From: Octopus bimaculoides
Lineage: Eukaryota
DNA: 64,000 nucleotides
NCBI RefSeq assembly: GCF_001194135.2
Contig: NC_068984.1
Span: 147,566,840 to 147,630,839, forward strand
Direction of reading: 5' to 3'
Position 1 is the stretch's first letter, and every line of letters starts with the position of its first letter. Of the stretch, positions 327 to 58,074 are shown piece by piece. Position numbers and translations under genes: made by a program. The notes beneath the pieces are model-generated. The model did no database searches, was not told the DNA's origin, and saw nothing but the letters and a program-made list of their open reading frames with translations.

Positions 327-897
327 ATGTTTTGTTGTGCTGGTTGTAGGAAATCTAAATCAAAGAAGATTTTGCAAGTAACACCAGACAGCAAGAACTG
401 TGAAAATCCAATTTTCAAGTCAGGAAACGGAGTTGAGCCACCGATTGTTGAGAAAGTAGAACTTGACCTTCAGACAAAACCAGCCAGCGTAGAAACAACA
501 ACAGCAACAACAGACATCAAAAAAGAGACTGCAGCTGATCCAGTTGCATCTTCTAAAGAAAATACTTTTACCTCCGAAGCAAAGACGAAAGAATTTAAAA
601 AGGACATTGTTAAAAAGCCCAGCAGTGAGCAACCAGTTTCCTCTCTACCGTTTGCGAGTGAACTTATTAAAGCATCACAAAAAAGAGAAAAACGTGTTGC
701 CAGTGAGCTATCGAAAGCTCTTACCATTGCTGCAGAAGAAAGAGCTCGACTCAATTCTGGCGAAATGTCAGCTGAGCAAATGATAAAATCAATTGAGCGT
801 CTTGAGACAGCGGTGGTGAGCCTGGAACGGGTATCCACACGGCTTGAGAATATTGCCAACACTTCCGGAAAGTTAGTTAATACAGGCAACTCTGAAG
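327..897 (+). CDS. CAP1: CAP first coding exon 1a: long N-terminal extension followed by the RLE coiled-coil motif
   Basis: ATG at 327 follows an in-frame TGA at 300-302, with no AG in between. The C-terminal part MSAEQMIKSIERLETAVVSLERVSTRLENIA matches the CAP/Srv2 N-terminal RLE repeats. It ends at the donor GAAG|GTAAGA after 571 nt (phase 1), which fits exon 27832. Confidence 0.9.
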
Positions 898-16615: not shown

Positions 16616-16959
16616 TCTTGCAGAATCATTTTTATTCAGGTTTTTTCTTTTGCTTGTTTTAATTTTCTTTGTTTCTTTCTTTTATTTCACAAATTATTTT
16701 GTTGAAGTCATTTGACCCATTTTGTCTGTGATCAATCATTCAAACTCATTTTATATTTATATTTCATTTCATTTCGTTTCTTAAAGTAGGAAATTTATTT
16801 AATAATAGCCGTTATGTAATTACAGAACAGCAATTTTAATTATCCACCTCACTTAATTGTGTTTACCGCTGAAGTTGTTGCAAATTTTCTGCCCAATTAC
16901 ACTCTTAGTATCCATCAAATTTATTTCTATACCAGTGTTTGGTGCCAAATAAGCTCCAC

Positions 16960-17006
<47 letters not shown>

Positions 17007-17044
17007 GAATCTTAAGAGTATTTTTTTTTTTATAAACTCTAAGC

Positions 17045-17147
17045 ATGTATGTAAACAATCCTAACAGCATGAATTGTTACTATCCCCCGCCATACAATTA
17101 TTCCTATCAGTATTACCAATCGCCAGTATATTATCAACCTGTCACAG
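17045..17147 (+). CDS. CAP1: Candidate alternative first coding exon 1c of CAP: MYVNNPNSMNCYYPPPYNYSYQYYQSPVYYQPVT
   Basis: ATG has A at -3. 34 open codons plus 1 nt end at a consensus donor CAG|GTGAGT in phase 1, the same phase as exon 1a. The composition (10 Tyr) is non-random. Confidence 0.65.
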
Positions 17148-17497
17148 GTGAGTTATCAATTTTTCTGTTTTATGGTAAATAATGCTGCCAGCCAAATATT
17201 CCAGTTGCAGTTTTTCTGTCTTATTCTGTTTCAAAGAGTGGTGAGGTGGGGTTCTATCAAATTTATTCACTGTATCTGTAACACAATATATTTAAGTAAT
17301 GCAGCACATGCAGGTACATATGGCAATATACGTATGTAGTACAATGTGTGAATGTAATACAATATATGCTGGTATATGATGCAATATATGTAATACAATG
17401 TATGACTCCTCTGATGTATATGCTTGATTTTCATGCCCTCCACCACCATCACATTCTGCAAGCACCTCCCCATGCTGAGGAGATGCTTGCACTGTGT

Positions 17498-19406: not shown

Positions 19407-19800
19407 ATGGGTACTTGTGTTAGTCACAGTCACAAAAAGCCATTGGTGGCTGTTGTGACACAGGACAGCAGTTGTACTGTAGGTGGTGGTGGTGGTGGTG
19501 GTGGTGGTGATGATGACAGTAGAGTTATTACAGGTAAAAGTGCTGTTTGTGTATCAGATTGCAATGAGGGCACTGAGACTACTTACTACGAGACTATCAA
19601 CAACTACCAGGAAAGCCACCACTACGTAAACAATTACCCCAACTACGATACTATCAAGGACCACTACTATGACAATAGCAAGAGCAGGACTTCTATCAGT
19701 GACGACGAGTATGACCTCTCCATTGATAAAATCTCACAACAAAAAGTGGGAATAGAAAAAGAGGAGGAGGAAGAGGAGGACAGCGATTATGCAGAAGTAG
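19407..19800 (+). CDS. CAP1: Candidate alternative first coding exon 1b of CAP: MGTCVSHSHKK... plus a Tyr-rich acidic tract ending DSDYAEV
   Basis: 131 codons plus 1 nt end at AG|GTAGGT (phase 1). The 3' part is rich in C-ending codons (TAC, AAC, GAC, CAC), unlike the surrounding intron. A phase-1 internal acceptor lies at 19557/19558. The 3' part is better supported than the ATG. Confidence 0.7.
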
Positions 19801-27831: not shown

Positions 27832-27935
27832 AAGTACTTTCACCGTTTGTAGTGGCTTACGATGACATTATCAAGGGACCCGTGGCAACATTTATTGCCC
27901 TCTCTTCCAAGATTAATGGCAATGTGAAGATCCAG
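27832..27935 (+). CDS. CAP1: CAP common exon 2 (start of HFD): (E)VLSPFVVAYDDIIKGPVATFIALSSKINGNVKIQ
   Basis: Long polypyrimidine tract and TTGCAG acceptor; CAG|GTAAG donor; phase 1 to 0. Aligns by eye with the CAP1 segment [32 protein letters not shown]. Confidence 0.95.
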
Positions 27936-30430: not shown

Positions 30431-30508
30431 GCCGCTATGGTGCAGGAAGCTTTCAATGCTCAGCGAAGTTTCCTTGTTCAAGTATCTCGCAGCAAAAAGC
30501 CAGCAAAT
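30431..30508 (+). CDS. CAP1: CAP exon 3: AAMVQEAFNAQRSFLVQVSRSKKPAN
   Basis: TTCCAG acceptor and AAT|GTAAGA donor; 78 nt, phase 0-0; HFD helix similarity. Confidence 0.95.
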
Positions 30509-31243
30509 GTAAGAAGTTGTCTCTTTATTTTGTCGGTCACCTATACATTGGCCATTGTTTTACAAATAATAAAAATATATTGTTTCCTTGAAATATTTTT
30601 GTATATTTAAAGATGGAACATGTACAACAACGACAACACTAATCAAAACTAAAACAATCAATTTACTGAAAGAAAAGATTACTTCTTATCTTTATGTAGA
30701 ATTTGTCTACAACAGTAGATGTTTCCAAATCAGGTTTGTTGTGCCATCAATAGTTATTAAAACACCCTTGTTTAGAGAAGACCATTTTATGAAAAGAGGT
30801 GTTCAGTTACAAAATGCTCAGAACTGTTGCTTTGTGACCCCCTGTAGCAAATCACAGTGTCTAGTTTACAAAACTCTCAGCCATTTACTGCAAGCCAGCT
30901 TGCTGGGGAGTTCATAGGTTTCATTTGATGTTTACCCTGGCTGATAATTATCCTAAACAAGATGAAGTTAATATGTGTTGTCAATGTATTTGGTATTGCA
31001 AAGACATGCAGCCTAGTGGTGAGGATGTTGGGCTTATGATCATTACATCATTGGTTCAATTCTTTGAGCAAGATATTTCATTTTGCATTGCTCCAGTTTA
31101 CTGAAGAATAAGTACGAGCCTTCAGCTAGGAACACAAAGAGCTGCATTGAATACTGCTAAGCCTCCACTCCATCACTCTAGAATGATTTTTCTTTAACTG
31201 AAGGTTGATCTTCTATAAATAGCTGAGCCTTGGATCGTTCCTG

Positions 31244-31284
<41 letters not shown>

Positions 31285-31294
31285 NNNNNNNNNN

Positions 31295-31339
<45 letters not shown>

Positions 31340-31575
31340 GATGTCATGCTTAGTCAAAAACAGGATGATCAAGATTATGTCTATGTTTGTTCCTAACTTC
31401 ATACACACCTAAAACAGTGAAAGGACTATCCATGCTCTCAACTCATACTTGCCAGTGAGTTATGGCTCTGCTTTATTATTTGAAACTATTTTGCTAAAAA
31501 CTGAAAATAACATTTCTGAATTTATTCCATGACTGTTTAAATATTGTTTTTTGTTTGTTTTTTTCCTCTTCTCAG

Positions 31576-31629
31576 GAGCAAATGAACCACCTTTTGAATC
31601 CAACAAGCTCTAAACTGCAAGCTATTCAG
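31576..31629 (+). CDS. CAP1: CAP exon 4: EQMNHLLNPTSSKLQAIQ
   Basis: CTCAG acceptor and CAG|GTAAGA donor; 54 nt, phase 0-0; corresponds to the LSDLLAPISEQIKEV region of CAP1. Confidence 0.93.
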
Positions 31630-32139
31630 GTAAGATGTCTTCATGTGTTCATCAGGATTTTACTGAGACAGGTTTTATTATGTACACTGCCTTATATGGC
31701 ATATGACCTTCATTTTGTGTTAGTGAGAAAATGCTGCTGTGAAAATTGGTTCTGTGTTTTTAGACTTCAGGTTTGACTAAAGACACAGGCATGGTCATAG
31801 ATAGCTTGAGGTGTGGTTATGAATCCCCGTTATGTTAACCAGGGTGATTGATATTATACATCACTCAAGTAAAGATTTAACCTTATCACTTGGTGCCTTG
31901 GATTCCTTTAGCAAAGTCCACCCTCTTACAAACTTTTGGTTCAGGATTTCAGTTTCAGGATACCTTCATCTCTTCTCCACCCCATAATCTTGGAGAACCT
32001 GTGAAGAATCATGGATGCTACCTTTCCCCTTGAATAAACAAAAAAAAAAAAATAGCTGAGCTGAGGTTACACAATATCATTCTCTACCCAACACTATCTC
32101 CACCTAGTAGCCCCACCATAGTACCACCATCCTCTTTTT

Positions 32140-32720
32140 CACACATTACCGTGAAACTCTATTATACATTGCAAACCTATCAAAGGAAGGCTAACTGGCA
32201 AAATAGCTTTTGTGTGTGGCAAATGCACAGGGGCAATAAACCCTGAAAATGTGTAGAAAACAGCTTCTGTCACATGCCAGGGGAAAAAAACTGGAAGTAG
32301 TTGATAGCTTCTGTTACCTAGGTGACCAAGTCAGTAACTGGGGTGGATCTAGAATAAGAATAGGCTGCGCAAAGTACAGAGAGCTCCTACCTCTGCTGGT
32401 GACAAAGGGCCTCTTGCTCAGAGTGAACGGTAGACTGTATGACGCATGTGTGTGAACAACCATGCTACATGGCAGGGAAATATGGGCCGTGACTGTTGAG
32501 GACATGTGTAAGCTTGTAAGAAATGAAGCTAATATACTCCACTGGATGTGTAATGTTAGTGTTCATACATGACAGAGTGTAAGTGCCCTGAGAGAAAAGT
32601 TGGACATAAGAAGCATCAGTTGTGGTGTGCAAGAGAGATGACTGCAACTAGTATGGTCATGTGATGTGTATGGATGAAGACAGCTGTGCGAAAAGGTGTC
32701 ACACCCTAACAAGCCAAGTG
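32140..32720 (+). mobile_element. RTE LINE 3' fragment
   Basis: FVCGKC...LEVVDSFCYLGDQV...RIRIG.AKYRELLPLL..KGL.LRV.GRLYDACV; same family type as the element at 58-60 kb. Confidence 0.85.
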
Positions 32721-32759
32721 AGACCATAACCGTGGCCTATGCCAGTGTTGCATAACCAG

Positions 32760-33285
32760 CCAATTCAAGAATACCCTTCAATCATTGGGCAATAAACTAT
32801 GCTTGCGAAGACCTGTTCAGTCAAGTGAAATCATTGTCGCAGCCAATGCCTGTACCACCTGACTGGTATGTAAATAGCACCATTTGAGCATGATTCATGC
32901 CAGTCCCACCAGATTGGCTACAGTAGCCAATGTGCCATACGAATGTGGTTGATGCCAGTGCCACCTGACTGGTCCCATGCTGGTGGCATGTAAAAAGCAC
33001 CATTCGAGCGTGGTTGTTGCCAGTGCTGCTTGACAAGTTCCCGTGCCAGTGGCATGTAAAAAGTACCATTCGAGCATGGTTGATGCCAGGACCGCCTGGT
33101 GGCATGTAAAAAGCACCCACTACACTCTCAGAGTGGTTGGCTTTAGGAAGGGCATCCAACTGTAGAATCCTTGCCAGATCAGATTGGAGCCTGATGTAGC
33201 CTTCTGGCTTGCCAGTCCTCAATCAAACTGTCCAACCCATGCCAGCATGGAAAGCAGACGCTAAACGATGATGATGATGATGATG
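32760..33285 (+). mobile_element. SINE with internal tandem GGTGGCATGTAAAAAGCACC repeats and (GAT)n tail (related copies near 8230-8620, 13756-13975, 29770-30300, 35050-35420, 47390-47640)
   Basis: Shared segment AAAAGCACCCACTACACTCTC.GAGTGGTTGG..TTAGGAAGGGCATCCAGCTGTAGAAA and ATGATGATG tail seen in several copies. Confidence 0.8.
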
Positions 33286-33649
33286 ACCTTCATTCTTATT
33301 TTACAATTAATTTGCATTATGAATTTAAAAGGTAAAAATCTCTTTGGGGCAAAATTGACATCAATTCATTTACATCCTAAAGGATAGAGAGTTTCTTACA
33401 GACTGAAAACAGCGGCAATTGTGTCTTTTGATTCCATTCTAAGAATAGCTAGAGATTAAACTACAACCACAGTGGACAATGGCTAGTAGTAGTCCTGAAG
33501 AACTAGGTCATATTACTATTTACCCTCAATAAAATCTAGGTTTCTTTTTTCTTTCTTTAGAGGTTTATATATATATATATNNNNNNNNNNNNNNNNNNNN
33601 NNNNTATATATATACCTGTACATATATATGCATATACTCATTGATTATT

Positions 33650-33690
<41 letters not shown>

Positions 33691-35009
33691 TCCAGTATTT
33701 GTTAAAACAGTATAAGCCCACATCAAAAATAAGTAAATAAAACAAATGATTCTGATAAAATCCCCAACCAACACAATTATAACTCCAAATCTCAAAGGTT
33801 GAATTAAAATAATTAATGAAAGACCTATTATTAATATCATATTAAAATATGAAAACATTTTAATCTATAACTTCCGGTGTTATTATTTTACTCTTAAACT
33901 GTTTCTTGTCCTTTCACCAAAAGTAAATAACTTTTTCAAATTAAATATATTAATAAATCATAACAATCGCAAGAATAATCTGTGTGAACTCACATAAACC
34001 CCTCAACGGTCCAACCACCTTTGTTGTACAACATACATCATTCTTCTTGTTGCATTTGTCTAGCACACTCCTGTCTGGAATCTCCTGTCACTGAGGTATT
34101 ATTAAGATGACTGAAGTTCATGTGAAATACATTCGTAAAATGCTGGTTTCAATTGATTTAATACTGAAAACCTATCTGACTAGTTTAAATCCTCACACTG
34201 TATACAAATAAGAAAAACAGGTTAGCAGAAATAAACCACAGTTTATTTCTGTATCAAGCCATATGCTCTAATGTAACCTATCTGGCACTGATCGCTCATT
34301 AGCCCTGTCTTGTGTGTCTCTTTCAAATGGACTTCCCGAAGTGATTTTGTGTTGTTGTTTTGTAAGCAGCTCTTCTTATGATGGTCTCTGTCAACAAAAT
34401 CTTTATTATTTATATTATGAAGGTTTTTTTTATTACATTGTTGTTGTTGTAGGAGATGTTAGACAATCTTTTTTTAATGGTTATATTCCCACAATATATT
34501 TTTAGAAATGTATTGCATATGAGTGACAGAGAAGAGAAAGTAGTTTGTGAAAGTATGCTGTTTACGTTGAAGTATTGAGGGGACTCTATAAAGTAATTAT
34601 TCTTTGAAGCTCTAAAATTTGGGTTGTATGAGTCTTGGGGAGTGTTGTAACCCTGAGAAAGAAAATCTTACTTAAGAAGAGATTTTAGAATTTTTATTGT
34701 GTCACCATGTTTAATGCTGGTGAGACAATAAAACGGACAAAACCCACTGTAGAGCAGTTGGTAACAAGAGTATCCAACCAAAACCTTATCATATACAGCA
34801 ACAAAGATTGGCAGCTTTTTTTTTTTGCTGTTATTGTGTGCTTTAGATGAAGGACTACAGTAAGTGCTGGAAAAGACTCGTCCAACATACGTCAACATGG
34901 GAAAATGAACATAAAATGATGATGGTAATTACATGTGAATAAATGCATCCATCTAGATAGGTGCACAACACTCAGTCATATATGTATAAACATACATCTT
35001 GTATGTATG

Positions 35010-35051
<42 letters not shown>

Positions 35052-36837
35052 ATCATCATCATTTAATGTCCATTGTCTATCCTGGCATGAGTTAGACAGT
35101 TTGACCCGGGCTGGTAAGCTGGAAGGCTGCAGCAGACTCCAGTCTGTTTTGGCATGGTTTTCTATGGCTAGATGCCCTTCCTAATGCCCACCACTCCGAG
35201 AGTGTAATGGGTACTTTTAGGTGCCACTGGCAAGGGTACCATTTGCGTGGCACCAATATCTGTCACAAGTGCGGTTTTGCTGTGCTTGATGGGTCTTCAC
35301 AAACATGGCATAATGCCAAATGGTCTCAGTCCTTTTCTCCCTGAGGCCTAATGCTCAAAAGAGTGCTTTTACATGCCACTGGCACAGGTGCCATTTGTAT
35401 GACACCAGTATCTGCCATGACTGTGAATTTAAGTGTTGTGTATGTTCACTGTCTATGGCTACCTGGTATTATCCATGGTAATTGCACAATTGTCTTTGAT
35501 GCTACCTCAGGAATTCCTCAGTGTACATTGAGTATAAAAGAGACAGAAAATGGTATACAAGGGAAACTTAATTGTTCACGACGATTGTTTTGAGATGTCT
35601 TGTGTTGATCCGTTGTTGGTGGGGAAAGAACGCTAACAAAATGGTTTTATTAAATGTGAGCGAAACCAAGATCATTTAACAAGATAACGTTTATTACATC
35701 ACCTGACGAAATGCTTCTGCCCTGAGGGGGTCCACCACAACTAGTTGTATAGTTTCCCACCCGCAAGGGATCAATGCAGGGTGTCCAAACGATCATTGGT
35801 AAGCCAAGAAGTTTCCAGTGCATTCCATTTTCCATTTCTATCATCTGTTATATCTATAGACACACACACACACACACAGGCATGGTGTAGGCATAGATGT
35901 GTCGTTTTAGTTTCCTTCCTGACCATGTAGTTTTGAGTTCAGTCCCACTGCACAGCACCTTGAGCAAGTCTTTTCTACTATAGTTCCAGGCCAACCAAAG
36001 CTGAGTGGATTTGATAGATGGAAACTGAAAGAAGCCTGTCATATATGCATGCATGTGTGTGTGTGTTTGTGTTTCCTCTTGTCTTGACATCCTTTGGTGG
36101 TTGTAAACCAGTCCTACAAGTGAGGGTCTTCATTTCAAGTCTTCCATGAAAAATGTCTGGCTATGAGAAAAGACTTCCTTGCTTGGTAACGGGTGTTGGC
36201 AATAGGTAAGGCATCAAGCCATAGAAAATCCATCCCCCAAAATTCTGTCTGACCCATGCAAGCAAGAAAAAGTGGACATTAAATGTTAGTGAGGAGATGC
36301 AGTACTAATTTTTCTACATCACCGAGTAGACTTATTGACCTACATATAGAAGATAGTTATTGCATTTAACCTATTTATTTGTCTCTTAAATCCTGACTAC
36401 TTAGGGAAATCATTCCATGGCCAACAGCAGTTAGAACTTCCTGCTAACCCAATGACTTTTCATTGGAATTTGGTTGCATTAATTATGTTTTTTTTCTCCT
36501 TTCCTGTCCCTCATCATATCGAAGGGAAAAAGTGTGGGAATATGGGTCTCCATCTCAGGCAGAAAATTAATCATTTATCTCAAAATAGAATATTATATTA
36601 AAAATATAAATTAAAGACAAACTAAGAGTGCAACACTTTAGCATAGAAACTATTGTATTATTTTAGAATAGCTGATCAAAGCAAAAGCCACACTGTTAAT
36701 TGGGAAATTATTGAATCATTGTGTGTATATGGGAATGTGTCTACATAAACTTGTATATATAAATAAATAAAACAGAAATGTTATGTAAAAATTTCCAAGT
36801 AATTTTGTTTACCAGTTATATGTTCTGTCTCTTTCAG

Positions 36838-36927
36838 GAATTGCGTGAGAAAAACCGTAGAGATCCATACTTTAACCATTTATCAGCCATCAGTGAATCA
36901 ATCCCAGCGCTTGGATGGGTAACTTTG
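36838..36927 (+). CDS. CAP1: CAP exon 5: ELREKNRRDPYFNHLSAISESIPALGWVTL
   Basis: Contains the family signature REKNR...FNHLSA.SESI.ALGWV; TTTCAG acceptor and TTG|GTAAGT donor; 90 nt. Confidence 0.98.
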
Positions 36928-38147
36928 GTAAGTTCTCATTTTTTATTTTACTTTCACAGAAATTTAAGCAGAGTTTTGGGAGTAGCTTAACTTTCCTAGT
37001 TTGTTGTTTGAGTAATTTTTAATGCCGTTTCTACAACTTTTAGTAGTGATCTTGGGGTAATGTTTAAGATGTTAATTTAACCCCTTTGTTTCTATATTTC
37101 TGTTAAAATATACTGTTTTTGTTTCAATATAGAAATGCTGTATTTGCTCAAGTCGCTTCCCCTAATTCACTGTTAAAACTTGGTACAAAATTTTTTCCAT
37201 GCCAGTTTTTTCAGTTAAATTCTCATTGCCCTTTCTAGACTCATGGGAGAAATTGAAATTAGTGTTACACGTCGTCAAGAAATATTTGTACTAGGCATTA
37301 CCATGTTGTTAAGAACTATGCTTCCCAGCCACGTGCTTTTTGGCTCAATCTCAGTGTGTTGCACCTTGAGCAAGTGTCTTCTATGATAGGCCAGTGATGA
37401 CCAGAGCTTTGTGAGTGGATTTGGTAGGTGGAAACTGAAAGAAGTCCACTCTGTTGTGTATGTATGTATTTGTGTCTCCTTGTCTTGACATCATGTGACA
37501 GCTGTAAATGGAAGTCATTCATTTTCAAATATCCTGTGAAAACATGTCTGTTCGTGGAGGAATATTACCTTATTTGGAAACAGATAAGAGTTGACAATAG
37601 GATCGGGATCCAACTGTAGAAAACCTGCCTCAATAAATTCCTTCTGATCCATGCAAGCTTGCAAAAATGAACATTAAAACAATGAGGATAACTATTCCTA
37701 TAGGTTTAAGAGATGAACCCGACTTAAGGCATGTATTTACAGTTCAATCACCTCAGTCAGCTAGAATCAAGTATCTTGTTCATGCAATTAAAATGACACT
37801 GGAGTAAAATATACAAAGCCCAGTATACCCATCATGTATACCCAGTATACCCATCATGACTATCCGTCTGATAAGGGTACACCAGGCCCATGCATCATAA
37901 CCAAATGTGATATGTGGTGACATAGTGATCTGATACCAAAATAAACAGTGCACGACCTTGCAGGTGGGGCCCAGTTAGAATTTTCTTTAGATTAAGTAGC
38001 TCATCCGGTTCAAAAGGTCCCTGAATAAGGGTTGTTTAAGGTTGTTGAACGAAACACCCATGTTTCCAAAGGTAAATTATCCAAACCCCAAAGAATTCCT
38101 TTCGGCACATGGCTATGATTCTTCCCCAAAAGTTTGTTATTATTTAA

Positions 38148-38363
38148 CCCTTTGTTTGCCAACCTGGCTGAAACCGGCTCTGGCAATACAAATGTCTTGT
38201 TTTCATAAGTTTTGAATTAAAATCTTCCACCAAACCTTAGTCACAATTTATGTTCCTAACACCAGCTGAATGATAACCAAGTTATTTTACTAAATTCTTT
38301 GTTATATTTAAAGTAATTGAAAGAAACACAGAGCATCTCAACAGGAATATGGTAACGAAATGG
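38148..38363. mobile_element. piggyBac-like MITE
   Basis: TTAA on both sides (38144-38147 and 38364-38367); imperfect termini CCCTTTGTT...AACGAAATGG; about 216 bp. Confidence 0.5.
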
Positions 38364-39261
38364 TTAAGACAGCGAGCTGGCAGAATTGTTAGCAAAGCAG
38401 GCAAAATACTTAGAAGCATTTCCTCTGTCTTTACATTCTGAGTTCAAATTCCACCAAGGGCAATTTTGCCTTTCATCCTTTTGCTATTGATAAATTAAGA
38501 ACCGGTGGAACACCGAGGTTGATGTAATTAACTAGCCTTTAATAGAAAGGATTATTATTACTTGTAGTAGTAGCAGTAGTAGTAGTCCACCACAGTTGAC
38601 TTTGCCATTTGTCCTTTTGACATTGATGAAATAAGTTTGAACCCAAGATACCAAGAGCACTGGGGGGGGGCATTGTAATCGCCTCCCCACCTGCAAATTT
38701 CAGGCTTTGTGTTTATCATAGAAAGAAGTTTCATTATTACCCTGCATCTAACATACAGGCACAGCATCCTCCGTCCCAGGGCTAAGTTGACTTGCGAGCT
38801 TTATTGTGACCTAAGTAGTGCCAGTGGCACGGAAAAAGCACCAAGCACACACTGTAAAGGGGTTGGCATTAGGAAGGGCGTCCACCACCCATAGAAACCA
38901 GACAGCAGAGCACAATCCAATCCTTTCATTCATTGGATCCTTGTCAATGCATCCAACCCATGCCAGCATGGAATACAGATGTTAATGATGATGATGATTA
39001 TGAATAGATGTGAAGTAAAACTGCTGCAGATGGAATTCTCTTTCCACGACAGCAATTACCCACCAATCACTATACACATTAATGAGCTGATAGCAAATTA
39101 AATGTGAAACAGTGTTATTATGTTGAATAAATTTAGAACTAAATGAAGAGTGAAAAACCATCCTCTTCCTCTCTAACCAAAATTGGCAGCAAGTTACCAA
39201 AATGAAATAATGATTTCCTTGTGTCCTTGAGGTTTCATGAACTTAATTACTTTAATTGCAG

Positions 39262-39344
39262 AATACTCCGGTATCTTACATCAAGGAAATGTCTGATTCA
39301 GCACTGTTCTACACCAACCGTGTTCTCAAAGAATTCAAAGAGAA
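39262..39344 (+). CDS. CAP1: CAP exon 6: NTPVSYIKEMSDSALFYTNRVLKEFKE(K)
   Basis: Contains the signature KEM.D.A.FYTNRVLKE; TTGCAG acceptor and AA|GTAAGT donor; phase 0 to 2. Confidence 0.97.
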
Positions 39345-40255
39345 GTAAGTCTCCAGTTATTTTTATCCTCATCCACCAAATCATCATCATCATTTCATGC
39401 TACTTTCCATGCTTGCATTGGATTGGATGGAATTTGTGGGCATAGATTTTATCTGCCCATCCTGTTACTAAACCTCAGCTGCTTCCCCCAACGACCAGAC
39501 ATGTTTTCATGGAAGTCTGCAAATGGACACCATTTGCTTGATGGTGGCACTCTTTTACAAGGAGACAATAACAGACATGCACTCACTTACATATACACAC
39601 ACAAACATACCCATGTACACACACTCAATGGGGCTTCCTTTCAGTTTCCATCTACCAAATCCACCTGCAAGGCTTTGATCAGCTTGGAGCTAAAGTAGAA
39701 GACATTTTCCCAGTGTACCACTGTGTGATACACTAGACAAAGTTCTTACCCTTCTGCGTCAATAAATTTGATTTTCCTCCAAAGTAGTTCAATCATTTAA
39801 ATTCTTTTTTAATTGTCTTTAATTAAGGGTCTGCTCTCTCTCTTCCTTCTTTTCTGTCTCCCCTCCTTTATCTTAAAACACAAAAAAAAAAAACCATCTA
39901 CAAACATCAATGATGTTTGAGTCAATCCCGCTTAAATTACTCGTCCACCACTGCCAAATAAAAAGTCCAGTCTACTTAGAAATCTTGGAAACTACATATT
40001 ACATTGGATTCTCAGTGTGTGTGTGTGATGAAAATGTTGTTTAAATATAATCACAGGTGTTATCTTCTATCTTTCTTCACCAGAATTGATTGTTGGTTCA
40101 TGACATTATGTACATTAGCACCGACCTTATCATTAGACTAAAATATATCCTTATTGATGATGATGATGATGATGGTGGTGGTGGAGGTAATAATATAGGT
40201 GTTACTGTTGATTATGATGATGGTGATAACTATGATGATTTTGGTTTACTTGTAG

Positions 40256-40361
40256 AGATGCAACTCATGTTGAGTGGACCAAAGCTTGGATTAATGCCTT
40301 GAAAGAGCTTCAATCCTATGTCAAAGAATACCACACTACAGGACTCTCTTGGAATCCACAG
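40256..40361 (+). CDS. CAP1: CAP exon 7 (end of HFD): DATHVEWTKAWINALKELQSYVKEYHTTGLSWNPQ
   Basis: Contains the signature HV.W...EL..Y.KE.HTTGL.W; TGTAG acceptor and CAG|GTCAGT donor; phase 2 to 0. Confidence 0.97.
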
Positions 40362-43174
40362 GTCAGTATTTTCTTCTTGGTGTCCAGCAAGCGCTTCTAC
40401 AAGATCTCACCAATTTAGGCCAGTATCAGTTTGCAATAAAAGAAAACTGCCGAATACATCAGACAGGATTAGGTTGCCATAGGTTACAGCAGCATGAAGA
40501 TCTGAATTATTGATGCCAGGCCAAATATAAGAATGAAGTTGTTTTGAATTCATATTTATTGTGCAGCTAAGCACAAGTGTGGGTATGCGGTTAAGAAGCT
40601 TGGTTGGAAACCATGTGGTCATGGGTTCAGTCCCATGTGTGGCACCTTGCACTATAGCCCATGTCTAACCAAAGCAATATGAGTGAATTTGTTTATCACC
40701 ACCATTTAGCATCTGTTTTCCATGCTGGCATTTATTGTGTGTTTGTGTCTAAAGTTAATAGAATGATTGTAAACGAGCATCATCGTCACACAAGCAAGGT
40801 TGTTTGTTTCAAATGTGTAAAAAAAAACATTTCTGGCCAAGGAGGGGAAATATTACCTTGCTTGGAAACAGGTTGGGGTTGGCAACAGCAAGGACATCCA
40901 GCTATAGAGAATCTGTGTGAACCAGTTCGGTCTGACCCATGCAAGCATAGAAAAGTGGACATTTAATGATGGTGAGTGTGTTGCTGTAACCTATGGCAAC
41001 CTAATCCTGGGCCCTAAAACTGATGTATTAGGTAACAGTAACATCTTATACGGTATTTTTCTCCTTCTCTTTCTCTCTCTCCACTTTCTGTGTTTGAGGA
41101 TTGTGTGTTTATTTATATGTAAAGTAAACAGGATTACATGACTGTATTGAACCCTTTTTTTATGTTTTTATACCACAAAATAAACAAACTCTACATGTTC
41201 GTACTCACACATGCATGTAGAACTGGATAGACTCACCCTTCTTTAACAAATACAAGGGATAACCTCACCATATGTTGCAGTGATAAAGGGCATCTCCAAC
41301 CACTTCATCTCAACGTTTGTCATTCTCATGTTTTAGTTAATATTCCTGTAGCTCAGCTGACGATTGCCAACTGTCCCCTTTCTAGATGCAAGTCTCTTAA
41401 AGAAAATGTTTGAGGGGTTCAGCTACCATTTATCTGGTAGCTGTGACAAAGCTATTGAAGTTACTGTGTGGAAGCAAGGTTAGTTAGCATGGTGGAAAAG
41501 ACATTGACGTTTGGTGCTTTACTTTTCAATATATATTTTAACAATCCATTCACCCTATACAATCCTTGGTTTCACTTCTGTTCACTTTCCTGTAAGTTGA
41601 GTGTATCCTCTCCATCACATCTTCACCATCTCTCTCTCTGTCTCCCTCTCTCCCCAACCAAAGTATATCTGCTTTTCTGCAGTTGCCTAGTTTTTTCTCT
41701 CAACTCTCATCTGGCACAAACCACCTTCCTCAATACTATTCCCTCACCTCATCTCATTTCAGAGATCTGGTCTTTTAAATTATTCGGTGACCTCACAGCT
41801 GCTGTGAAGTGGTTGGCATTAGGAAAGGCATCAAGCCATAGAAACCATGCGAGAGCAGACTTAGCTAGGTACAGTCTTCTGATATGCCATCTTCCCTCAA
41901 ACTGTCCAGCCATGATGATGATGATGATGTTTGTTTTTATCTCAAGTTATAAAAACAATTTAACTTTGTACTAAAAAAAATGCTCAATACTTTTTTTGTT
42001 GGGTTCATTTGTTTTTACAAGAAGAGCTGTGACTGTCTGATGAGGAATATGTACCTGACAGAAATAAGTATTGAGGGTTGATCTGTTCAAATAAAACTCT
42101 TCATGACAGTAGCTGCAATCCAATGACTGAAACCAGTAAAAGATCATAGAATAAATGATGAAAAAAAACAACTCAGTAAAATGTAAAGCAAACATTGTAT
42201 GAATTTTAGCCCCCCCCCGCCTCCTCCTCCTCCCCACCATTCTGCTGCCACCAAATAAAACCTTAACTTGATAGGAATCTCTTAAATAAATTCCCCTTTT
42301 TCTTTCTTCTTTTTCCTCCGTTGTTGTTGTAGTGTGGAATCAGCTGTGTTATGGAGGGGTCTAAAGTAACATTTGGTGAGCCAGAAATGTGGGAGGCAGG
42401 CAATGTCAGCAGGAAAAGACCATTATCAGTTCTGCTTCAAAAGAATTCACTTTGATGTTGTCTTTTCATTCTGTTCTGGGAATTCACCTCTTTCCATTGA
42501 AACCCCTTTCTTCTCACATATCTATCCCAACAACAACAACAACAACAACATAACACTTCACTGTTGCTGACGAAGGACCATCTTTACAATTGCTCAGCTT
42601 GCTAGAAATACTGAAATAGCAGCCAAATCTCCCTCACGTTGCATTCCATTATATCATCTATATAAGAAAAAGGAAGGACACATTAGAACAATCATGGAAA
42701 AACTGTGGCTCATGGGTCACATGTGGCACTTGGGACTTTCTGAATGGCACACCTAATGAGAAATTACTTTGAATTTTTTTACTTGTGTGACCCAGCTGAT
42801 GATGAACCATCATGTCTCATGTGGCCCACTTCTCAAAAAAGGTGACCCAAGCCTGCATTAGAGAAAGCAATCCTAGATGTGTGAGAAAAGAAAAACAAAA
42901 ACTGTAGAATGGCCACAGTTGGAACACCTTTGGTGATGAGTCTATTTAATCCTGGCCAAACAGCAACAATAACTTACTTCTGAAGGAGGGAACCTCTTTG
43001 TAGTTACTCACCTGTCAAAATTAACCAAATTACCTTCAAATAACAGCCAAAATAAAGCCAGATACATTAGAAAATGTAGTGTCTGATGAACAAGAAACCA
43101 AGACGGTTATGGCTGTAAAAGTCTATAACATGATAGAGCTGCTCAGTTTAAGGCTGACCTGGAGTTAAACATTA

Positions 43175-43206
<32 letters not shown>

Positions 43207-45542
43207 CACTACTACCACCACCACCACCACCACCATCCACTTTTTACACTCACAGTATCAAACAGACCATCAGATACTTACTGTATACTGCTGGTCCCAA
43301 TGCACTTCTAATTCTCTCTTGATTGCATCATTCCTTTCCATCTTGTCCCAAATCCCTTAAATTGTCTCCCCATCGTTGTGGAGGCCTTCCATGTGGTCTT
43401 GGATGTCCCTCAGCATCTGTGCAGGTCCACTTTGCAAGATATTCAGCCCTGCAATCACATTGTTCAGTCTGCTGCGAAAAAACTGCTAAGAATTTCACTT
43501 TTTATATAATTAGAGTAATTGTTGGTCAACCTCAGTGTGGTGCACAGACTTGCAAGAAATAGCAGCTGAATCTCTGTCAAATCATAGATTGGCAATGTAG
43601 GCACTCGAGATAGAAGGCTCATGGCTAAAGCAACTTTGATCTCTTAGGACCAACCTGTTTGTTGTTGGCTTTTTTCTTTTTTCTCTCTACTTTTCTGGGG
43701 CTTCAAAAGATTTGTTTTTTTATGACAAGTCTATCCTAGTGTTTCTTCACTTCTATCATTGCAAAGACTGTCACCAAGGTTTCAAGGTCTTTCTTCCATT
43801 CCTCCTTCCCTCTCTCTCTCTCCTCTTCTTTCTCTTTCACCTCACTCTGTGTTCATTCATTCCCTGCCTCTTCCCTCTCCAATTTCTTACTCTCCATTCC
43901 TCCCTTTAATCAATTCTCCTGTTAAACTCTCATCAACCCCACACACAGCTGGCCTCCACTTCTCACCAATTTGTTGTCAGTCAGAGCTGCACCTTTTTCC
44001 AGACATGTTTATTTCACTTTCTCTCTCCTATTTTTCTTTACATTAACATAACATCTGTATGCATGTTCATGTATTTACACACACACACATATACATATAC
44101 GTTGGGCCCAGGGCTATAGTAGAAGACACTTGCCCAAGGAGGTACACTGTAGAACTGAGACCAAGACAACATGATTGGGAAGCAAACATCTTAACCACAC
44201 TGCCACACCTGTGTCTATCAGTGTATTAAGTTTTTTTTGTGTGTGTGTGTGTGTGTGTCCACCCAAATTATATTTGTCTTTGGAATTGTTACTTGCTTGG
44301 ATACCCCATTGTTTACTCCACATAAAAGGGATGCTTGTGACAGTCATAATTATCCATTCCACCCTTCAGTTTTTTTTATTATTATTAAACATGTCAGGAG
44401 TAACTAATAAACACACACATGCACACACACACACACACACTTCATCAATCTATCTGTTCCTATTTTTCTTTAGTGGACATCTATCTGACATGTACAAATA
44501 CAAACATAATGTACATACCAATCATCATCATCATCATCATGGAAAATGTGGGAAAATTGAAACAAAACAACTCCACAATCTTGCTTGTGCACACACACAC
44601 AATTGTTTTTTCCTCTCTCTCTTCTTATGAAGGCTAAAAAAAAAATGATGGAGGGGGTGGAATAGTTGATTACATTGACCCCCAGTGATCAACTGGTACT
44701 TATTTTATCAAACCCCAAAGGATGAAAGGTACAGTCAACCTCAGCAGAATTTGAACTCAAAGTGTAAACGCAGATGAAATGCTACTCAGCATCTTGTCCA
44801 GCATATGCTAACGATTCTGCCCACTTGATACCTTTTGGTGTTGCTGTAATAATAAAACACTTGAGTTGCCATAATACAGCAATCAGAGGAGGAGAGGAGT
44901 TGAGGTCTGTGCAAAGATTCAGGTGAATACTCAGGAGTTACTGCAATGTGTTGGGTCAAGGTGCATTGGAAATAACACAAGAGGGAAATATTTACAAGGA
45001 AAAAAAAAAAGAAACAAATATAGCCCCCCCCCCCCCTCATTGTTACGTATCCATCCACCTTCAACAGCTGAAGTGGTGAAGGCTGAAATGGCATGAAACT
45101 AGTGAAGTCAGTAGCAGCAGCAGCAACAATGTTGACAAGGATGAGAATGTTGCAGATTGTTTATAGTTAGTTTCTGAAAGAAAGAAAGAAAGTGCTTTTG
45201 TTAGATTAAAGACTTGCAAACATATATACACATACACATGGGGCCCTTTTAAAATAACCTTATTTTTGTTATGATGTACAGAGAAAATACACAGTGAAAT
45301 ATAAGACCCATGTTAAGAAAAGTAATTTCCTTTTTAGGGTCTCAAATGCAACAGTAAGTAGGAGGGGAACACAACTTTCCTTATTTTATGTATGTGTGAG
45401 TGGAGATATACATATGTGTGTGTGTGTGTGTGTGTGTATATACACACACATACACGCGCACGTAGAGATATATGTATGTGGGTGTGTATGAGTGTATGTA
45501 TGTGTATATGTAAGTGCATGTATGTGTGTGTGTGTATATATA

Positions 45543-45579
<37 letters not shown>

Positions 45580-47170
45580 TTGTATAGTAGATATTTTATC
45601 TCTTTACATACTCAAGTCAGCTCACTAATTGCTCTGCTGACGAGTTTTAGTAAGAGTGGTGAGGTAAAGGCAGGAAGAGGGGTGGGCAATGCTATCATCT
45701 TCATCATCATCATCATCCTCATCACCTCCTCCTCTTCTGGCTCACTGCCCCCTTCAAAAGACTGTATGGTTAACTTAGCTTTTACACATTTCTGCAAAAA
45801 TGTTTTATTTGTAACTATAGAAGGCAATTATCTTCTAAAATTATTTTTCTCTCCCACTTTTCCTCCTCCTTCTCCCCACCTTTTTTCTTGTTTCTTTTTG
45901 TCATTTTACCACTTTTGAGAAAAGGGGGAAAGAAAAAGGGGATAGTTGTATAATTAAAACACACGGTGTTACTTTTGCTGTTGTTGTTGTTACTGGTGCT
46001 GTAACAGATAGAATGGAAAGCTTATCAGCAGGTCTCATTGGCTGACAATTTAATTTGATATAAAAACAAAACAAATCTAGAGGACAAGGAACAAGGGCAG
46101 TGATTGCTGTAGGATTAATAGTAGTGGTGGTGGTGGTGGTATCAGAAGGGAACCAGAAATTCTTGACGCCAACTGTATGAAACTATTTGTTGCATCATTG
46201 CTATGATTCCTTATTAACAACAATACTATTACCACTACTACTACTACTAATAATAATAATAATAATGCTTTCTATTATAGGCACAAGGCCTGAAATTTGG
46301 GGGAGGGGTATAGTCGATTACATCAACCTCAGTACCTGACGGGTATTTATTTTATTAACCCTGAAAGGATTAAAAGCAAAGTTGATCTCAGCAGGATTTC
46401 AGCCCAGAATGTAAAAAAAACCAAAAGAAATGACAGAAAGCATTTTGTCTCAAAGACAGCTCTTTCCATTTGACAATGGTGGTAATTCTTTGTATGTTGT
46501 TGTTGCCGTCTCCCTCTCTCTCTCTCTCCTTTTCCTGTACTTCCTTCAGGTTGGGTAGCCATGTATTTCCTTTGCAGTAGTACACCTGTTTCTGTCTTCA
46601 TTCCTGATCTCTCTCTCTCTCTCGGGCCAGGTAACCTGGTACCTCCTCTACAGCAAGACACTCGTTTCTGTCTCTCTGGCCTCACTATAACCTTTCATCA
46701 TCTGACACAAAATCACCTCCTCCAAAACCCCCTCCCCTCTCAAAAGAGTTGTTTTCTTTTTGTTTGTTTTTTTGTCTTGCAAGGTACTTGGTGACCCCTG
46801 TCAGTGCAGGTGCCACTTAAAGAGCACCCAGTCCACACTGTGAAGTGGTTGGTGTTAGGAAGGGCATCCAGCTGTAAAAATCCTGCTAAAACAGTTAGAG
46901 AGGTCTGGTGCAGACTTCTGCCTGGCCAGCTCTTGTGAAACGTCCACCTTCCATGGAAGCTGGATGTTAAATGATGATGGTGATGATGTATATGTAGATA
47001 TATGTATGTATGTATGTATATGTGTGTGTGTGTGTGTGTGTGTATAGATCGGAAGAGNNNNNNNNNNATATATATGGTAAATTCCCAAAAATGAAAAGCA
47101 AACAAAAAAAAATGCAAGGACGTAGTACATGAAAAGTATTAGCAGATGCTCAGGGAAGGAAAGAAAGATG

Positions 47171-47206
47171 GTTTAACGTTTTGAGCAGATGCTCTTCTTC
47201 AGAAAC
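47171..47206 (-). ncRNA. Decayed minimal type I hammerhead-ribozyme-like motif
   Basis: Minus strand reads GTTT-CTGAAGA-A-GAGC-ATCT-GCTC-AAAAC-GTT-AAAC. Stem I is GTTT/AAAC and stem II is GAGC/GCTC. The core GAAA is changed to AAAA. Confidence 0.4.
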
Positions 47207-47290
47207 AGGAAAATCCAAAAGAAAAGGCAGAGGAAGAAAATTGCCAATGATTCACATGTGGTTACATTTTGAATATATATGTATATGTAG

Positions 47291-47325
<35 letters not shown>

Positions 47326-48799
47326 AACATGTGTATATATATGTATGTAGGTATATATATATGCATATATAGATATGTGTGTGTCGTCATCATCACCACC
47401 ATTTAATGTCCGTTTTCCATGCTGACATGGGTTGGACGGTTTGACTGAAGTCTGGAGAGCCAGTGGCTGCACCAGGCTCCTATCTGATCTGGCAGAGTTT
47501 CTACAGCTGGATGCCTTTCCTAACGCCAAGCACTCCGCGAGTGTAGTGGGTGCTTTTTATGTGCCACCGACACGGGAGCCAGTCAGTTGGTACTGGCAAT
47601 GGCCACGTTTGGATGGTGCTTTTTACATTCCACTGGCACAGGAGCCAGTCAGGCAACAAATACCTAACATACATATAAGTGCAGGTACCAACCACATGGT
47701 TCCGGGTTCAGTCCCACTGCATGGCACCTTGGGGAAGTGTCTTCTACTACAGCCTCAGGCTGGCCAAAGCCTTGTGAGTGTACTTGGTAGAAGGAGACTG
47801 AAAGAAGCCCATTGTATATATGTGTGTGTCGTGGAAAGAGAATTCCAACTGCAGCAGTTTTACTTCACATCTGTTAATAATCATCATTGGCAAAAGAAAC
47901 CGATAGAATAAGTTCTGGGGTTGATTAGTCCGACTAAAGGTGGTGCTCCAGCATGGCTGCAAATGACTGAAACAAAAGAGTATACAAAAAAAAAAAAAGA
48001 TAACTGGTTATATTTATCTGAAGTCACCGCCACCACCACAAACCAATTAGTGAAGAGATATTTATATTACTATATATAATAAACTAATTTTAACTATCAT
48101 GTTTGCCCCCGTCTCCATCCTCACACATCAATGGAGTGTCATGTACATTGTGTCATGTTACAACATCATCTGATAACTCTGATCTACTCGGTACCATTTG
48201 GTGACCCTGTAAGAAACCCTCATCTAGTTTTCTTTTCATGTGGTGGATATGTTATATCAGAGTATCTGTTGCAGGATCTGTGTGTGTGTGTGTGTGTCTC
48301 TGTCTGAATGTGTATGTTTCAGCTCATACTCTACATGAAATGCGATATATATCATTTGATAACTTTCAAGTTCCTTATTGTGCTGTGGATGTTTGGTGGG
48401 GGAGGTATATTGGAAATATGACTGTACTTAAATATTATCTTCTCTGAGAAATTTTTTTTTTTATTAGACTTCTGCATATTACTTTATCAATTCGTATTTA
48501 GTTTTGAACAATATTATTCAGAGGTCCATCTATATTTCTAGCCTTTCTCTTAGAAGAAATCTTTTTAAACTGGACAGAAATCATGGGAATGATGTGTTAA
48601 TGACAATAACATCAACACAAACGTTGAAACCACATTTCAGTCCATTAGGAAGCAGGGATGTATTTCAGGGGCTGATTTTCTGTGAGTGTTTTTGCTCAAA
48701 GTTATCTTTCATTCTCTTAGGGTTGAATTTATTTTCTTTTTTTATTTTGTAAATGGAACTCTGTCATCACTGAAGTGAGTTTCAGCAGAACACAATGTT

Positions 48800-49952: not shown

Positions 49953-49996
<44 letters not shown>

Positions 49997-51120: not shown

Positions 51121-51169
<49 letters not shown>

Positions 51170-51354
51170 AAAACGATGGAATGTCAAGAATGGTAGTTTG
51201 GGATAAAATCTTATTTTCATAATTCTTTTAAATTCTGTAAATGTTGACTTTGTTGTCTTTCATCTTTGATTTAAAAAAACCCCCACTGTATTCCCCGCCC
51301 CCTTGTCCCACTATCAAAATATGTGGTCCCTGTATGAATGTATCATCAGGGTGG

Positions 51355-51403
51355 AGAATGGTAGAATGGTAGAATGGTAGAATGGTAGAATGGTAGAATG
51401 GTA
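51355..51403. repeat. 8-bp tandem repeat AGAATGGT, about 6 copies
   Basis: Directly visible. Confidence 0.95.
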
Positions 51404-52384: not shown

Positions 52385-52427
<43 letters not shown>

Positions 52428-58069: not shown

Positions 58070-58074
58070 ATGTA

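What the first reader, a model, noticed from the sequence alone, without database searches (positions are those of the whole stretch)
17045..17147. Exon 1c: 34-residue Tyr/Pro/Gln/Asn peptide with a PPPY WW-ligand motif
Seen: MYVNNPNSMNCYYPPPYNYSYQYYQSPVYYQPVT (10 Tyr) ends in CAG|GTGAGT, phase 1. It is too short for the ORF track and easy for annotators to miss. Established: PPxY binds group I WW domains (NEDD4-family ligases, YAP), and Y/Q/S/N-rich low-complexity segments can drive condensates. Inference: an RLE-less CAP isoform might gain WW-mediated regulation or condensate-based clustering in place of coiled-coil oligomerization.
Basis: partly seen in the sequence, partly recalled or inferred. 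Interest (0 to 1): 0.7.

Follow-up and report, generated by a model that had tools for sequence, protein, structure and literature searches.

The report
Candidate alternative first exon of CAP
A 34-codon tyrosine-rich reading frame that ends at a perfect splice donor sits in the first intron of an actin-regulator (CAP) gene and could give a variant protein without its oligomerising head, but whether it is ever used could not be tested here.

Summary
Window 17045-17146 (+) reads MYVNNPNSMNCYYPPPYNYSYQYYQSPVYYQPVT. Base 17147 (G) precedes GTGAGT, and G+AA at exon 2 (27832) gives PVT-E-VLSPF in frame.

The host gene is an adenylyl cyclase-associated protein (CAP) gene (Pfam CAP_N, E=3.6e-52). The ORF lies in its 27-kb first intron.

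It is unlikely to be pure chance, though chance is not excluded:
- The donor is the best-scoring GT on the + strand.
- Simulated introns yield 0.01-0.06 such phase-1 ORFs with a donor this strong.
- It is single-copy and not a tandem repeat.
- 10 of its 13 TA dinucleotides fall in codon positions 1-2.

No transcript or orthologue could be reached. The protein and metagenome searches also missed the genuine exon 2, so their silence says nothing.

A second ATG-initiated, Tyr-rich, phase-1 ORF lies in the same intron ("1b", 19407-19800). It is frame-conserved in a related species: all 7 indels are multiples of 3. Arthropod CAP sequences in the database also show N-termini without the RLE motif. 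So CAP isoforms without the RLE motif are credible and not new in kind.

My estimate is about 0.42 that 1c is a real coding first exon and 0.40 that it is a chance ORF. The WW-domain and condensate ideas are untested speculation.

The parts
17045..17147 (+). Candidate exon 1c: ATG plus 34 codons (17045-17146) plus 1 nt (G, phase 1). Second in-frame ATG at 17069-17071 (Met9). PPPY codons at 17084-17095.
   Evidence: Single copy in the window. No tandem repeat. 10 of 13 TA dinucleotides fall in codon positions 1-2.
17148..17153 (+). Splice-donor consensus GTGAGT. The full 9-mer is CAG|GTGAGT.
   Evidence: Top-ranked donor on the + strand, 9.12 bits. Only copy of this 9-mer on the + strand.
16957..17044 (+). 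Immediate upstream context: (CA)n at 16957-17005, T11 run at 17021-17031, TATAAA at 17031-17036, in-frame TAA at 17033-35, weak possible acceptor aAG at 17042-43, A at -3 of the ATG. No ATG between 16817 and 17044.
327..897 (+). CAP exon 1a: MFCCAGCRKSKSKK..., containing the RLE coiled-coil motif (IERLETAVVSLERVSTRLE). Donor GAAG|GTAAGA, phase 1.
19407..19800 (+). 'Exon 1b': a second ATG-initiated, Tyr-rich, phase-1 first exon (MGTCVSHSHKK...DSDYAEV). Donor GTAG|GTAGGT. The reading frame is conserved in a related species.
27832..27935 (+). CAP exon 2, the start of the helical folded domain: (E)VLSPFVVAYDDIIKGPVATFIALSSKINGNVKIQ. Acceptor ttgcag| in phase 1. It is the shared acceptor for 1a, 1b and 1c.
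30431..62837 (+). Further CAP exons found in the window: 30431-30508, 31576-31629, 36838-36927, 39262-39344 (81 nt in frame to 39342 plus AA, donor gagaa|gtaagt, phase 2), 40256-40361 (first base A completes that codon), 61803-61982, 62715-62838 (123 nt in frame to 62837 plus G, donor gtag|gtaagt). The gene runs off the window end.
   Evidence: Pfam CAP_N PF21938, E=3.6e-52.

Best explanation
Window 17045-17147 is a genuine, probably lineage-restricted, alternative 5' coding exon of the CAP gene. A transcript that starts upstream of 17045 (promoter not identified) would be translated from ATG 17045, or from Met9 at 17069 if the TATA-like box at 17031 sets the start site. It would splice from the consensus donor at 17147|17148 to the shared phase-1 acceptor of exon 2 at 27832.

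The product would be a CAP whose N-terminal oligomerisation coiled coil (the RLE motif, encoded only by exon 1a) is replaced by a 34-residue disordered Tyr/Pro/Asn/Gln peptide placed directly before the helical folded domain. Such an isoform should keep the HFD, WH2 and CARP actin activities. It should lose the coiled-coil-driven oligomerisation that boosts cofilin-mediated severing.

Shown: the ORF, the donor, the phase compatibility and the statistical rarity. Inferred: transcription, splicing, translation and every functional consequence. The PPPY motif as a WW-domain ligand is a possibility only.
For: - The ORF and donor are as described.
- Phase-1 junction: G|AA=Glu with exon 2, the same phase as exon 1a.
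- The donor is the best on the + strand, ahead of real exon 2.
- The expected number of such phase-1 ORFs of at least 34 codons with a donor this strong is 0.01-0.06 per intron. Real-sequence decoys have donors of at most 5.9 bits.
- Only two phase-1 ATG-ORFs of at least 34 codons with a donor of 4 bits or more exist in intron 1, and both have 10 Tyr. The other one (1b) is independently validated as frame-conserved coding sequence.
- 1c is not a microsatellite or a dispersed repeat. It is the only open frame with at least 10 Tyr in 34 codons that is not a simple repeat.
- A at -3 of the ATG, and no upstream ATG for 228 nt.
- Local CpG o/e is 0.46-0.47 against a window median of 0.22.
- Arthropod CAP sequences in the database show N-termini without the RLE motif that join just before the HFD.
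- The role of the oligomerisation domain is taken from PMC10638096.
Against: - No transcript, junction or orthologue evidence was obtained.
- There is no recognisable promoter. The 90 nt upstream are a (CA)n microsatellite and a T-run, and the TATA-like box lies only 9 nt before the ATG.
- One chance phase-1 ORF of this length is expected in the intron if donor strength is ignored (0.7-1.1).
- An equally perfect donor occurs by chance on the - strand.
- Tyr codons are TAT-biased, 3 TAC to 7 TAT. This matches the intron background (36% C) rather than the other exons (14 to 6; Fisher p=0.056). Individual real exons do span the same range over all two-fold codons.
- The 3-periodic TAY pattern could be a decayed trinucleotide repeat; (TAY)n runs exist elsewhere in the window.
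Confidence: 0.42

Rival explanations
1. It is a chance open reading frame in intron 1. A stretch of AT-rich, G-poor intronic DNA, possibly a decayed TAY-type trinucleotide repeat, happens to lack stop codons, starts with an ATG, and abuts a fortuitous consensus GT site. It is not transcribed as an exon and has no function.
For: - About one phase-1 ATG-ORF of at least 34 codons with a donor of 4 bits or more is expected per intron by chance (0.7-1.1).
- A perfect CAG|GTGAGT also occurs on the - strand without any ORF.
- All three + frames are open for 25-37 codons before the donor, so the segment is stop-poor in general.
- Tyr codon choice (3 TAC to 7 TAT) matches the intron background.
- Many Tyr-rich open frames in this window come from TA-rich simple repeats.
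- A microsatellite and a T-run lie directly upstream.
- No homologue was found in any database, although that is uninformative.
Against: - The joint occurrence of the top-ranked donor with the ORF in the one useful phase is expected only 0.01-0.06 times per intron.
- Decoy ORFs in real sequence have much weaker donors.
- TRF finds no repeat in the ORF.
- C-rich codons (CCC CCG CCA, TCG, CAG) do not fit a simple decayed (TAT)n.
- The only other ORF of this class in the intron is a validated exon with the same unusual Tyr-rich composition.
Confidence: 0.4
2. It is a real exon, but not a protein-coding first exon. It would be a 104-nt cassette exon (17044-17147) that uses the aAG acceptor at 17042-43 behind the T11 tract. 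Included after exon 1a, it shifts the frame (G+CA, TGT, ATG, TAA) and gives a premature stop, so it would act as a regulatory 'poison' exon or belong to a non-coding transcript.
For: - A T11 polypyrimidine run lies 11-22 nt upstream of an AG at 17042-43, and the donor is very strong.
- The length of 104 nt is not a multiple of 3. Reading the sequence, the frame entering from exon 1a hits TAA after 3 codons.
Against: - The acceptor has A at -3 (AAG), the least favoured base, and 5 purines lie between the T-run and the AG.
- This model does not explain the 34-codon ATG-initiated frame or its 3-periodic Tyr codons.
- There is no transcript evidence.
Confidence: 0.1
3. 1c is the first exon of a composite Tyr-rich N-terminus. 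Its phase-1 donor would splice to an internal acceptor inside exon 1b (cag|GT at 19533|19534 or cag|AT at 19557|19558, both in frame). The product would then run through the 1b donor into exon 2, or terminate at the stop 4 codons past that donor as a small nested protein.
For: - Both candidate AGs inside 1b keep the frame for a phase-1 donor (coordinates).
- Both are conserved in the related species.
- Both segments are Tyr-rich.
Against: - Each AG has a 1/3 chance of being in frame.
- The conservation is explained by the coding constraint on 1b itself.
- The first acceptor has a purine-rich tract in front of it.
- The conserved MG... start of 1b argues that 1b is itself a first exon.
- 1c and 1b are not significantly similar.
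Confidence: 0.05

Closest known systems
N-termini of arthropod CAP/capulet-type proteins that lack the RLE motif (database sequences P0016, P0022 and P0032 'MTLERSLQE...', P0018 and P0019 'MSFSAFNDILQGPF...', P0004 'MSDGALSSSVSEFDDIMSGPF...')
   Same: The N-terminus lacks the RLE coiled coil and joins directly in front of the HFD motif x(Y/F)(D/E)D(I/L)xxGP. That is the position of the exon 1/exon 2 boundary in this window.
   Different: The N-terminal peptides are unrelated in sequence and are not Tyr-rich. Several of those database sequences are partial or come from uncurated assemblies. Here the exon is only predicted.
Exon 1b of the same gene (window 19407-19800)
   Same: Same intron, same strand, ATG-initiated, ends in phase 1 with G|GT, 10 Tyr, no Pfam match.
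   Different: 1b is 131 codons with a weak donor (4.4 bits), and its reading frame is preserved in a related species: 7 of 7 indels are multiples of 3. 1c is 34 codons with a perfect donor, and its conservation was not testable. The two are not significantly similar in sequence.
PPxY ('PY') motifs, ligands of group I WW domains in NEDD4-family ligases and YAP (own knowledge, not tested)
   Same: The core P-P-x-Y is present once (PPPY, residues 14-17), in a segment that is probably disordered.
   Different: A PPxY string is not surprising in a peptide that is 29% Tyr and 18% Pro. There is no evidence for binding, for conservation of the motif, or for expression of the peptide.
Tyr-rich prion-like low-complexity domains, such as the FUS-type [G/S]Y[G/S] domains (own knowledge)
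   Same: The composition is dominated by Tyr, Gln, Asn, Ser and Pro, with no charged residues.
   Different: It is only 34 residues, whereas such domains are typically well over 100. It lacks Gly and the [G/S]Y[G/S] spacing.

Membership tests
CAP/Srv2 (adenylyl cyclase-associated protein), the host gene | Helical folded domain (Pfam CAP_N, PF21938) | tested here: met
   Assembled exons 1a to 7: PF21938 E=3.6e-52, 177 bits against a cut-off of 27. 219 CAP homologues were found.
CAP/Srv2 (adenylyl cyclase-associated protein), the host gene | N-terminal coiled coil / oligomerisation domain with the RLE motif | tested here: met
   Exon 1a encodes IERLETAVVSLERVSTRLE, which aligns to the RLE motif in a human CAP1 sequence written from memory and used only as a tblastn probe and to the N-termini of the hits. 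Neither 1b nor 1c contains it.
CAP/Srv2 (adenylyl cyclase-associated protein), the host gene | WH2 region and C-terminal CARP domain | tested here: inconclusive
   Only the stretch between the WH2 region and the CARP domain and the first CARP exon lie inside the window (61803-61982, 62715-62838). The rest lies beyond the window end.
Alternative first (5') coding exon | Start codon, open frame, functional donor, and frame compatibility with the shared downstream exon | tested here: met
   ATG with A at -3, 34 codons, CAG|GTGAGT, and phase 1 matching the exon 2 acceptor.
Alternative first (5') coding exon | Own transcription start or promoter, and junction reads in transcripts | not testable with these tools
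   No transcriptome of the source species is reachable. Protein databases, the metagenome scan and the exact look-up contain no CAP sequence from this species. CpG o/e is only mildly raised.
Alternative first (5') coding exon | Conservation of the reading frame and donor in related species | not testable with these tools
   The related-species contigs found (L002-L004) end about 780 nt upstream of 1b and do not reach 1c. The same test succeeded for 1b.
PPxY WW-domain ligand | Pro-Pro-x-Tyr core | tested here: met
   PPPY at residues 14-17, nt 17084-17095.
PPxY WW-domain ligand | Demonstrated or conserved binding to a WW domain | not testable with these tools
   This needs expression evidence plus a binding assay.
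Condensate-forming prion-like low-complexity domain | Polar, aromatic-rich and uncharged composition | tested here: met
   10 Y, 6 P, 5 N, 3 Q, 3 S and no D/E/K/R in 34 residues.
Condensate-forming prion-like low-complexity domain | Sufficient length and valence (typically well above 60-100 residues) | tested here: not met
   The peptide is only 34 residues long. The length criterion comes from general knowledge.

The most novel reading that the evidence does not exclude
This cephalopod-type CAP gene carries a battery of three mutually exclusive first exons, all ending ...G|GT in phase 1 and all feeding the same HFD exon. They would swap the N-terminal module of an actin-turnover factor:
- 1a: a Cys-cluster plus polybasic head (MFCCAGCRKSKSKK) followed by the RLE oligomerisation coiled coil.
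- 1b: an MGTCVS myristoylation-type head followed by acidic Tyr motifs (YETI, YVN, YD(T/N)I, DYAEV).
- 1c: an uncharged Tyr/Pro-rich peptide with PPPY.

The same actin machinery would then be delivered as an oligomer, as a membrane-anchored phosphotyrosine scaffold, or as a WW-domain/NEDD4-addressable monomer.
Probability: 0.3. Interest if true: 0.55.

Novelty: new member of a known kind. Interest (0 to 1): 0.3.

Why it matters
The N-terminal coiled coil of CAP drives the oligomers that enhance cofilin-mediated filament severing (PMC10638096). If the exon is used, an isoform that replaces the coiled coil with a short Tyr/Pro-rich tail would be a natural separation-of-function variant: monomer recycling retained, oligomer-dependent severing altered, and possibly a new regulatory handle gained. 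It would also illustrate how very short first exons are missed by annotation in large, repeat-rich cephalopod introns. The practical value is modest. It is a precise, cheap hypothesis, with one junction sequence to look for. The work also turned up a better-supported sister exon (1b) in the same intron.

Tried and rejected
1. Word-indexed protein search with 1c plus exon 2 found no candidate at all. The genuine exon 2 also found nothing, so the database has no power here.
2. A CAP HFD query found 219 homologues, the best 47-52% identical over the full query, from arthropods and vertebrates. No close relative was found, and every listed hit is under 350 aa.
3. Exhaustive phmmer of the 34-aa peptide against 1.84 billion representatives gave 0 hits at E<=1e-3.
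4. A metagenome scan with back-translated patterns gave one locus (L001). It matches only YNYSYQYY at a contig edge and is otherwise unrelated, so it is a chance hit. No CAP sequence from this species or a close relative was found.
5. Exact look-up of the 45-aa read-through ORF found nothing on record.
6. Paralogy between 1c and 1b through the shared 'YVNN' was rejected (shuffle p=0.21 for DNA, 0.86 for protein).
7. 1c as a dispersed repeat or tandem repeat was rejected.
8. Codon usage as a discriminator gave Tyr TAC/TAT p=0.056 against the other exons, but individual real exons span 0.29-0.71 C-ending, so it is not decisive.
9. The search for a CpG island or promoter found only a mild local rise, partly caused by a (GCGT)n microsatellite. 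The sigma-70 promoter scan is irrelevant to a eukaryote.
10. The literature holds nothing on cephalopod CAP isoforms, and the SRA run identifiers are not mentioned in the library.
11. The related-species contigs L002-L004 were searched for a 1c orthologue and none was found; they do not extend far enough.

Full report
**Observation.** Window 17045-17146 on the + strand translates to MYVNNPNSMNCYYPPPYNYSYQYYQSPVYYQPVT. It has 10 Tyr, 6 Pro, 5 Asn, 3 Gln and 3 Ser, and no charged residue. An in-frame TAA at 17033-35 makes the ATG at 17045 the first start codon of the frame. A second in-frame ATG is at 17069. PPPY is encoded at 17084-17095. Base 17147 is G and is followed by GTGAGT, so the segment ends ACAG|GTGAGT in phase 1.

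**Host gene and geometry.** The + strand carries an adenylyl cyclase-associated protein (CAP) gene.
- Exon 1a (ATG 327, last base 897, donor GAAG|GTAAGA) encodes MFCCAGCRKSKSKK... and the RLE coiled-coil motif IERLETAVVSLERVSTRLE.
- Exon 2 (27832-27935, acceptor ttgcag|) starts the helical folded domain (HFD).
- Further exons lie at 30431-30508, 31576-31629, 36838-36927, 39262-39344, 40256-40361, 61803-61982 and 62715-62838. The gene runs off the window.
- The assembled exons hit Pfam CAP_N (PF21938) at E=3.6e-52 and retrieve 219 CAP homologues.

Exon 1a ends in phase 1, and G+AA gives Glu at the junction. It lies 16 kb into the 26.9-kb first intron.

**Is it more than chance?**
- CAG|GTGAGT occurs once per strand in 64 kb.
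- With a generic donor weight matrix, this is the best of 3790 GT sites on the + strand (9.12 bits). The real exon 2 donor is second (8.58). One equal decoy exists on the - strand at 43012.
- Markov simulations (orders 1, 3 and 5) of intron 1 give these expected numbers of phase-1 ATG-ORFs of at least 34 codons: 0.7-1.1 with any donor of 4 bits or more, 0.17-0.30 at 6 bits or more, 0.03-0.06 at 7.7 bits or more, and about 0.01 at 9.1 bits or more.
- In the real sequence, decoy ORFs of this kind on both strands have donors of at most 5.9 bits and at most 3 Tyr, apart from one YIYIYI microsatellite.

An ORF of this length alone is unremarkable. Its coincidence with the strongest donor, in the one useful phase, is unusual. 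The p-value is roughly 0.01-0.06, with thresholds chosen after the fact.

**Composition.**
- The segment is single-copy in the window and is not a tandem repeat.
- Ten of its 13 TA dinucleotides occupy codon positions 1-2.
- Among 966 open frames of at least 34 codons, it is the only one with 10 or more Tyr that is not an obvious microsatellite.
- On the other hand, all three frames are stop-free for 25-37 codons before the donor, because the DNA is G-poor.
- (TAY)n runs exist elsewhere in the window, so a decayed trinucleotide repeat could mimic the periodicity.
- Tyr codons are 3 TAC to 7 TAT. That resembles the intron background (36% C) more than the other exons (14 to 6; p=0.056).
- Individual genuine exons range from 0.29 to 0.71 C-ending over all two-fold codons, so codon usage does not decide.

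**Upstream context.** Directly upstream lie (CA)n at 16957-17005, a T11 run at 17021-17031 and TATAAA at 17031-17036. The TATA-like box is only 9 nt before the ATG, so a start site set by it would fall inside the ORF and favour Met9. The ATG has A at -3, and there is no upstream ATG for 228 nt. CpG o/e is 0.46-0.47 around the exon against a window median of 0.22 and 0.64 over exon 1a, but a (GCGT)n repeat contributes to this. An AG at 17042-43 behind the T-run could act as an acceptor. It has A at -3, and a 104-nt cassette after exon 1a would shift the frame to a stop within 4 codons. That poison-exon reading is kept as a minor rival.

**External evidence.** Nothing bearing on 1c could be obtained.
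- The word-indexed protein search with 1c plus exon 2 found no candidate at all.
- Exhaustive phmmer of the peptide against 1.84 billion representatives found nothing.
- The metagenome scan produced one chance hit, L001.
- The exact look-up failed.
- The literature is silent.

The genuine, conserved exon 2 was equally invisible. These negatives therefore carry no weight against 1c.

**A sister exon.** The only other phase-1 ATG-ORF of at least 34 codons with a usable donor in intron 1 is 19407-19800 ('1b', MGTCVSHSHKK...DSDYAEV, donor GTAG|GTAGGT). It also has 10 Tyr.
- The last protein search found P0121 (68% identity, full coverage) on Logan contigs from three runs.
- The contig aligns to the window through both flanks, so it is genomic DNA of a related species. 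Identity is 85% in the ORF against 75-79% in the flanks.
- All 7 indels inside the ORF are multiples of 3 (3, 9, 3, 3, 12, 3, 3). Only 1 of 18 indels in the flanks is.
- The ATG context and the donor are conserved.

Exon 1b is therefore a frame-conserved coding first exon. Its head fits the N-myristoylation pattern G-{EDRKHPFYW}-x(2)-[STAGCN]-{P} (own knowledge). This shows that the gene does use a Tyr-rich alternative first exon without the RLE motif, in this intron and in this phase. The contigs stop about 780 nt upstream of 1b and do not reach 1c. The apparent YVNN similarity between 1b and 1c is not significant.

**Comparison with what is known.** Arthropod CAP sequences returned include N-termini without the RLE motif that join immediately before the HFD (P0016, P0022, P0032, P0018, P0019, P0004). 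The N-terminal oligomerisation domain together with the HFD forms the oligomers that enhance cofilin severing (PMC10638096). An isoform starting with 1c would be expected to lack that property.

PPPY meets the string definition of a group I WW-domain ligand, but such a string is unsurprising in a peptide that is 29% Tyr and 18% Pro. At 34 residues the segment fails the usual length expectation for a condensate-driving low-complexity domain. Both functional ideas remain untested speculation.

**Verdict.** I put the probability that 1c is a genuine coding first exon at about 0.42, a chance ORF at about 0.40, a non-coding or poison cassette at about 0.10, and a composite with 1b at about 0.05. 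If real, it is a new member of a known kind: an alternative CAP first exon without the RLE motif. One junction sequence searched in transcriptome data of the source species would settle it.

Noticed in passing
window 19407-19800 (+); L002 437-898, L003 782-1243, L004 780-1241: A second alternative first exon ('1b') of the CAP gene: MGTCVS... (fits the N-myristoylation pattern), then YETI, YVN, YD(T/N)I and an acidic EEEEEE-D-x-DYAEV tail, ending in phase 1. Its frame is conserved in a related species: all 7 indels are multiples of 3, and the ATG and donor are kept. It has no Pfam match.
   Followed up: yes
window 327-770 (+): Exon 1a carries a long extension of about 145 residues in front of the RLE motif. 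The extension begins MFCCAGCRKSKSKK, a Cys cluster plus polybasic stretch that resembles a palmitoylation and membrane-targeting head. Typical CAPs start right at the RLE motif.
   Followed up: no
proteins P0016, P0022, P0032, P0018, P0019, P0004: Arthropod CAP sequences in the database have N-termini without the RLE motif that join just before the HFD. Every CAP hit listed was under 350 aa, so full-length CAPs appear to be missing from that database's listing.
   Followed up: partly
window, at least 14 sites on both strands (e.g. 8731, 13844, 30199, 33159, 35168, 46871, 47507): A dispersed repeat family whose translation contains FLQLDALPN(T/A)NHSESVVGAF-like motifs recurs throughout the introns. 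No tRNA-like gene was detected by ARAGORN.
   Followed up: partly
window 55574-59532 (-): Retroelement remnants in an intron: ORFs with sub-threshold RVT_1 (E=8e-4) and PHD-finger (E=1e-4) matches, interrupted by an assembly gap at 57277-58059.
   Followed up: partly
whole window: CpG depletion is strong (median o/e 0.22). One of the highest values (0.64, fourth of 196 windows) lies over exon 1a (301-900).
   Followed up: partly
window 17738-18002 and 11 other N runs: The window holds 3,539 N in 12 gaps. One gap lies between 1c and 1b, so any promoter of 1b, or further small exons there, cannot be read.
   Followed up: no
window 43012 (-): The only other perfect CAG|GTGAGT in the window lies on the opposite strand with no ATG-ORF of 25 codons or more in front of it. 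It served as a natural decoy for the donor statistics.
   Followed up: yes
L001 1-30 (JAAUXV010317476.1): A metagenome contig starts with TYNYSYQYY, encoded by DNA that differs from the window only at third codon positions. The remainder is unrelated. It is judged a chance match to the degenerate search pattern.
   Followed up: yes
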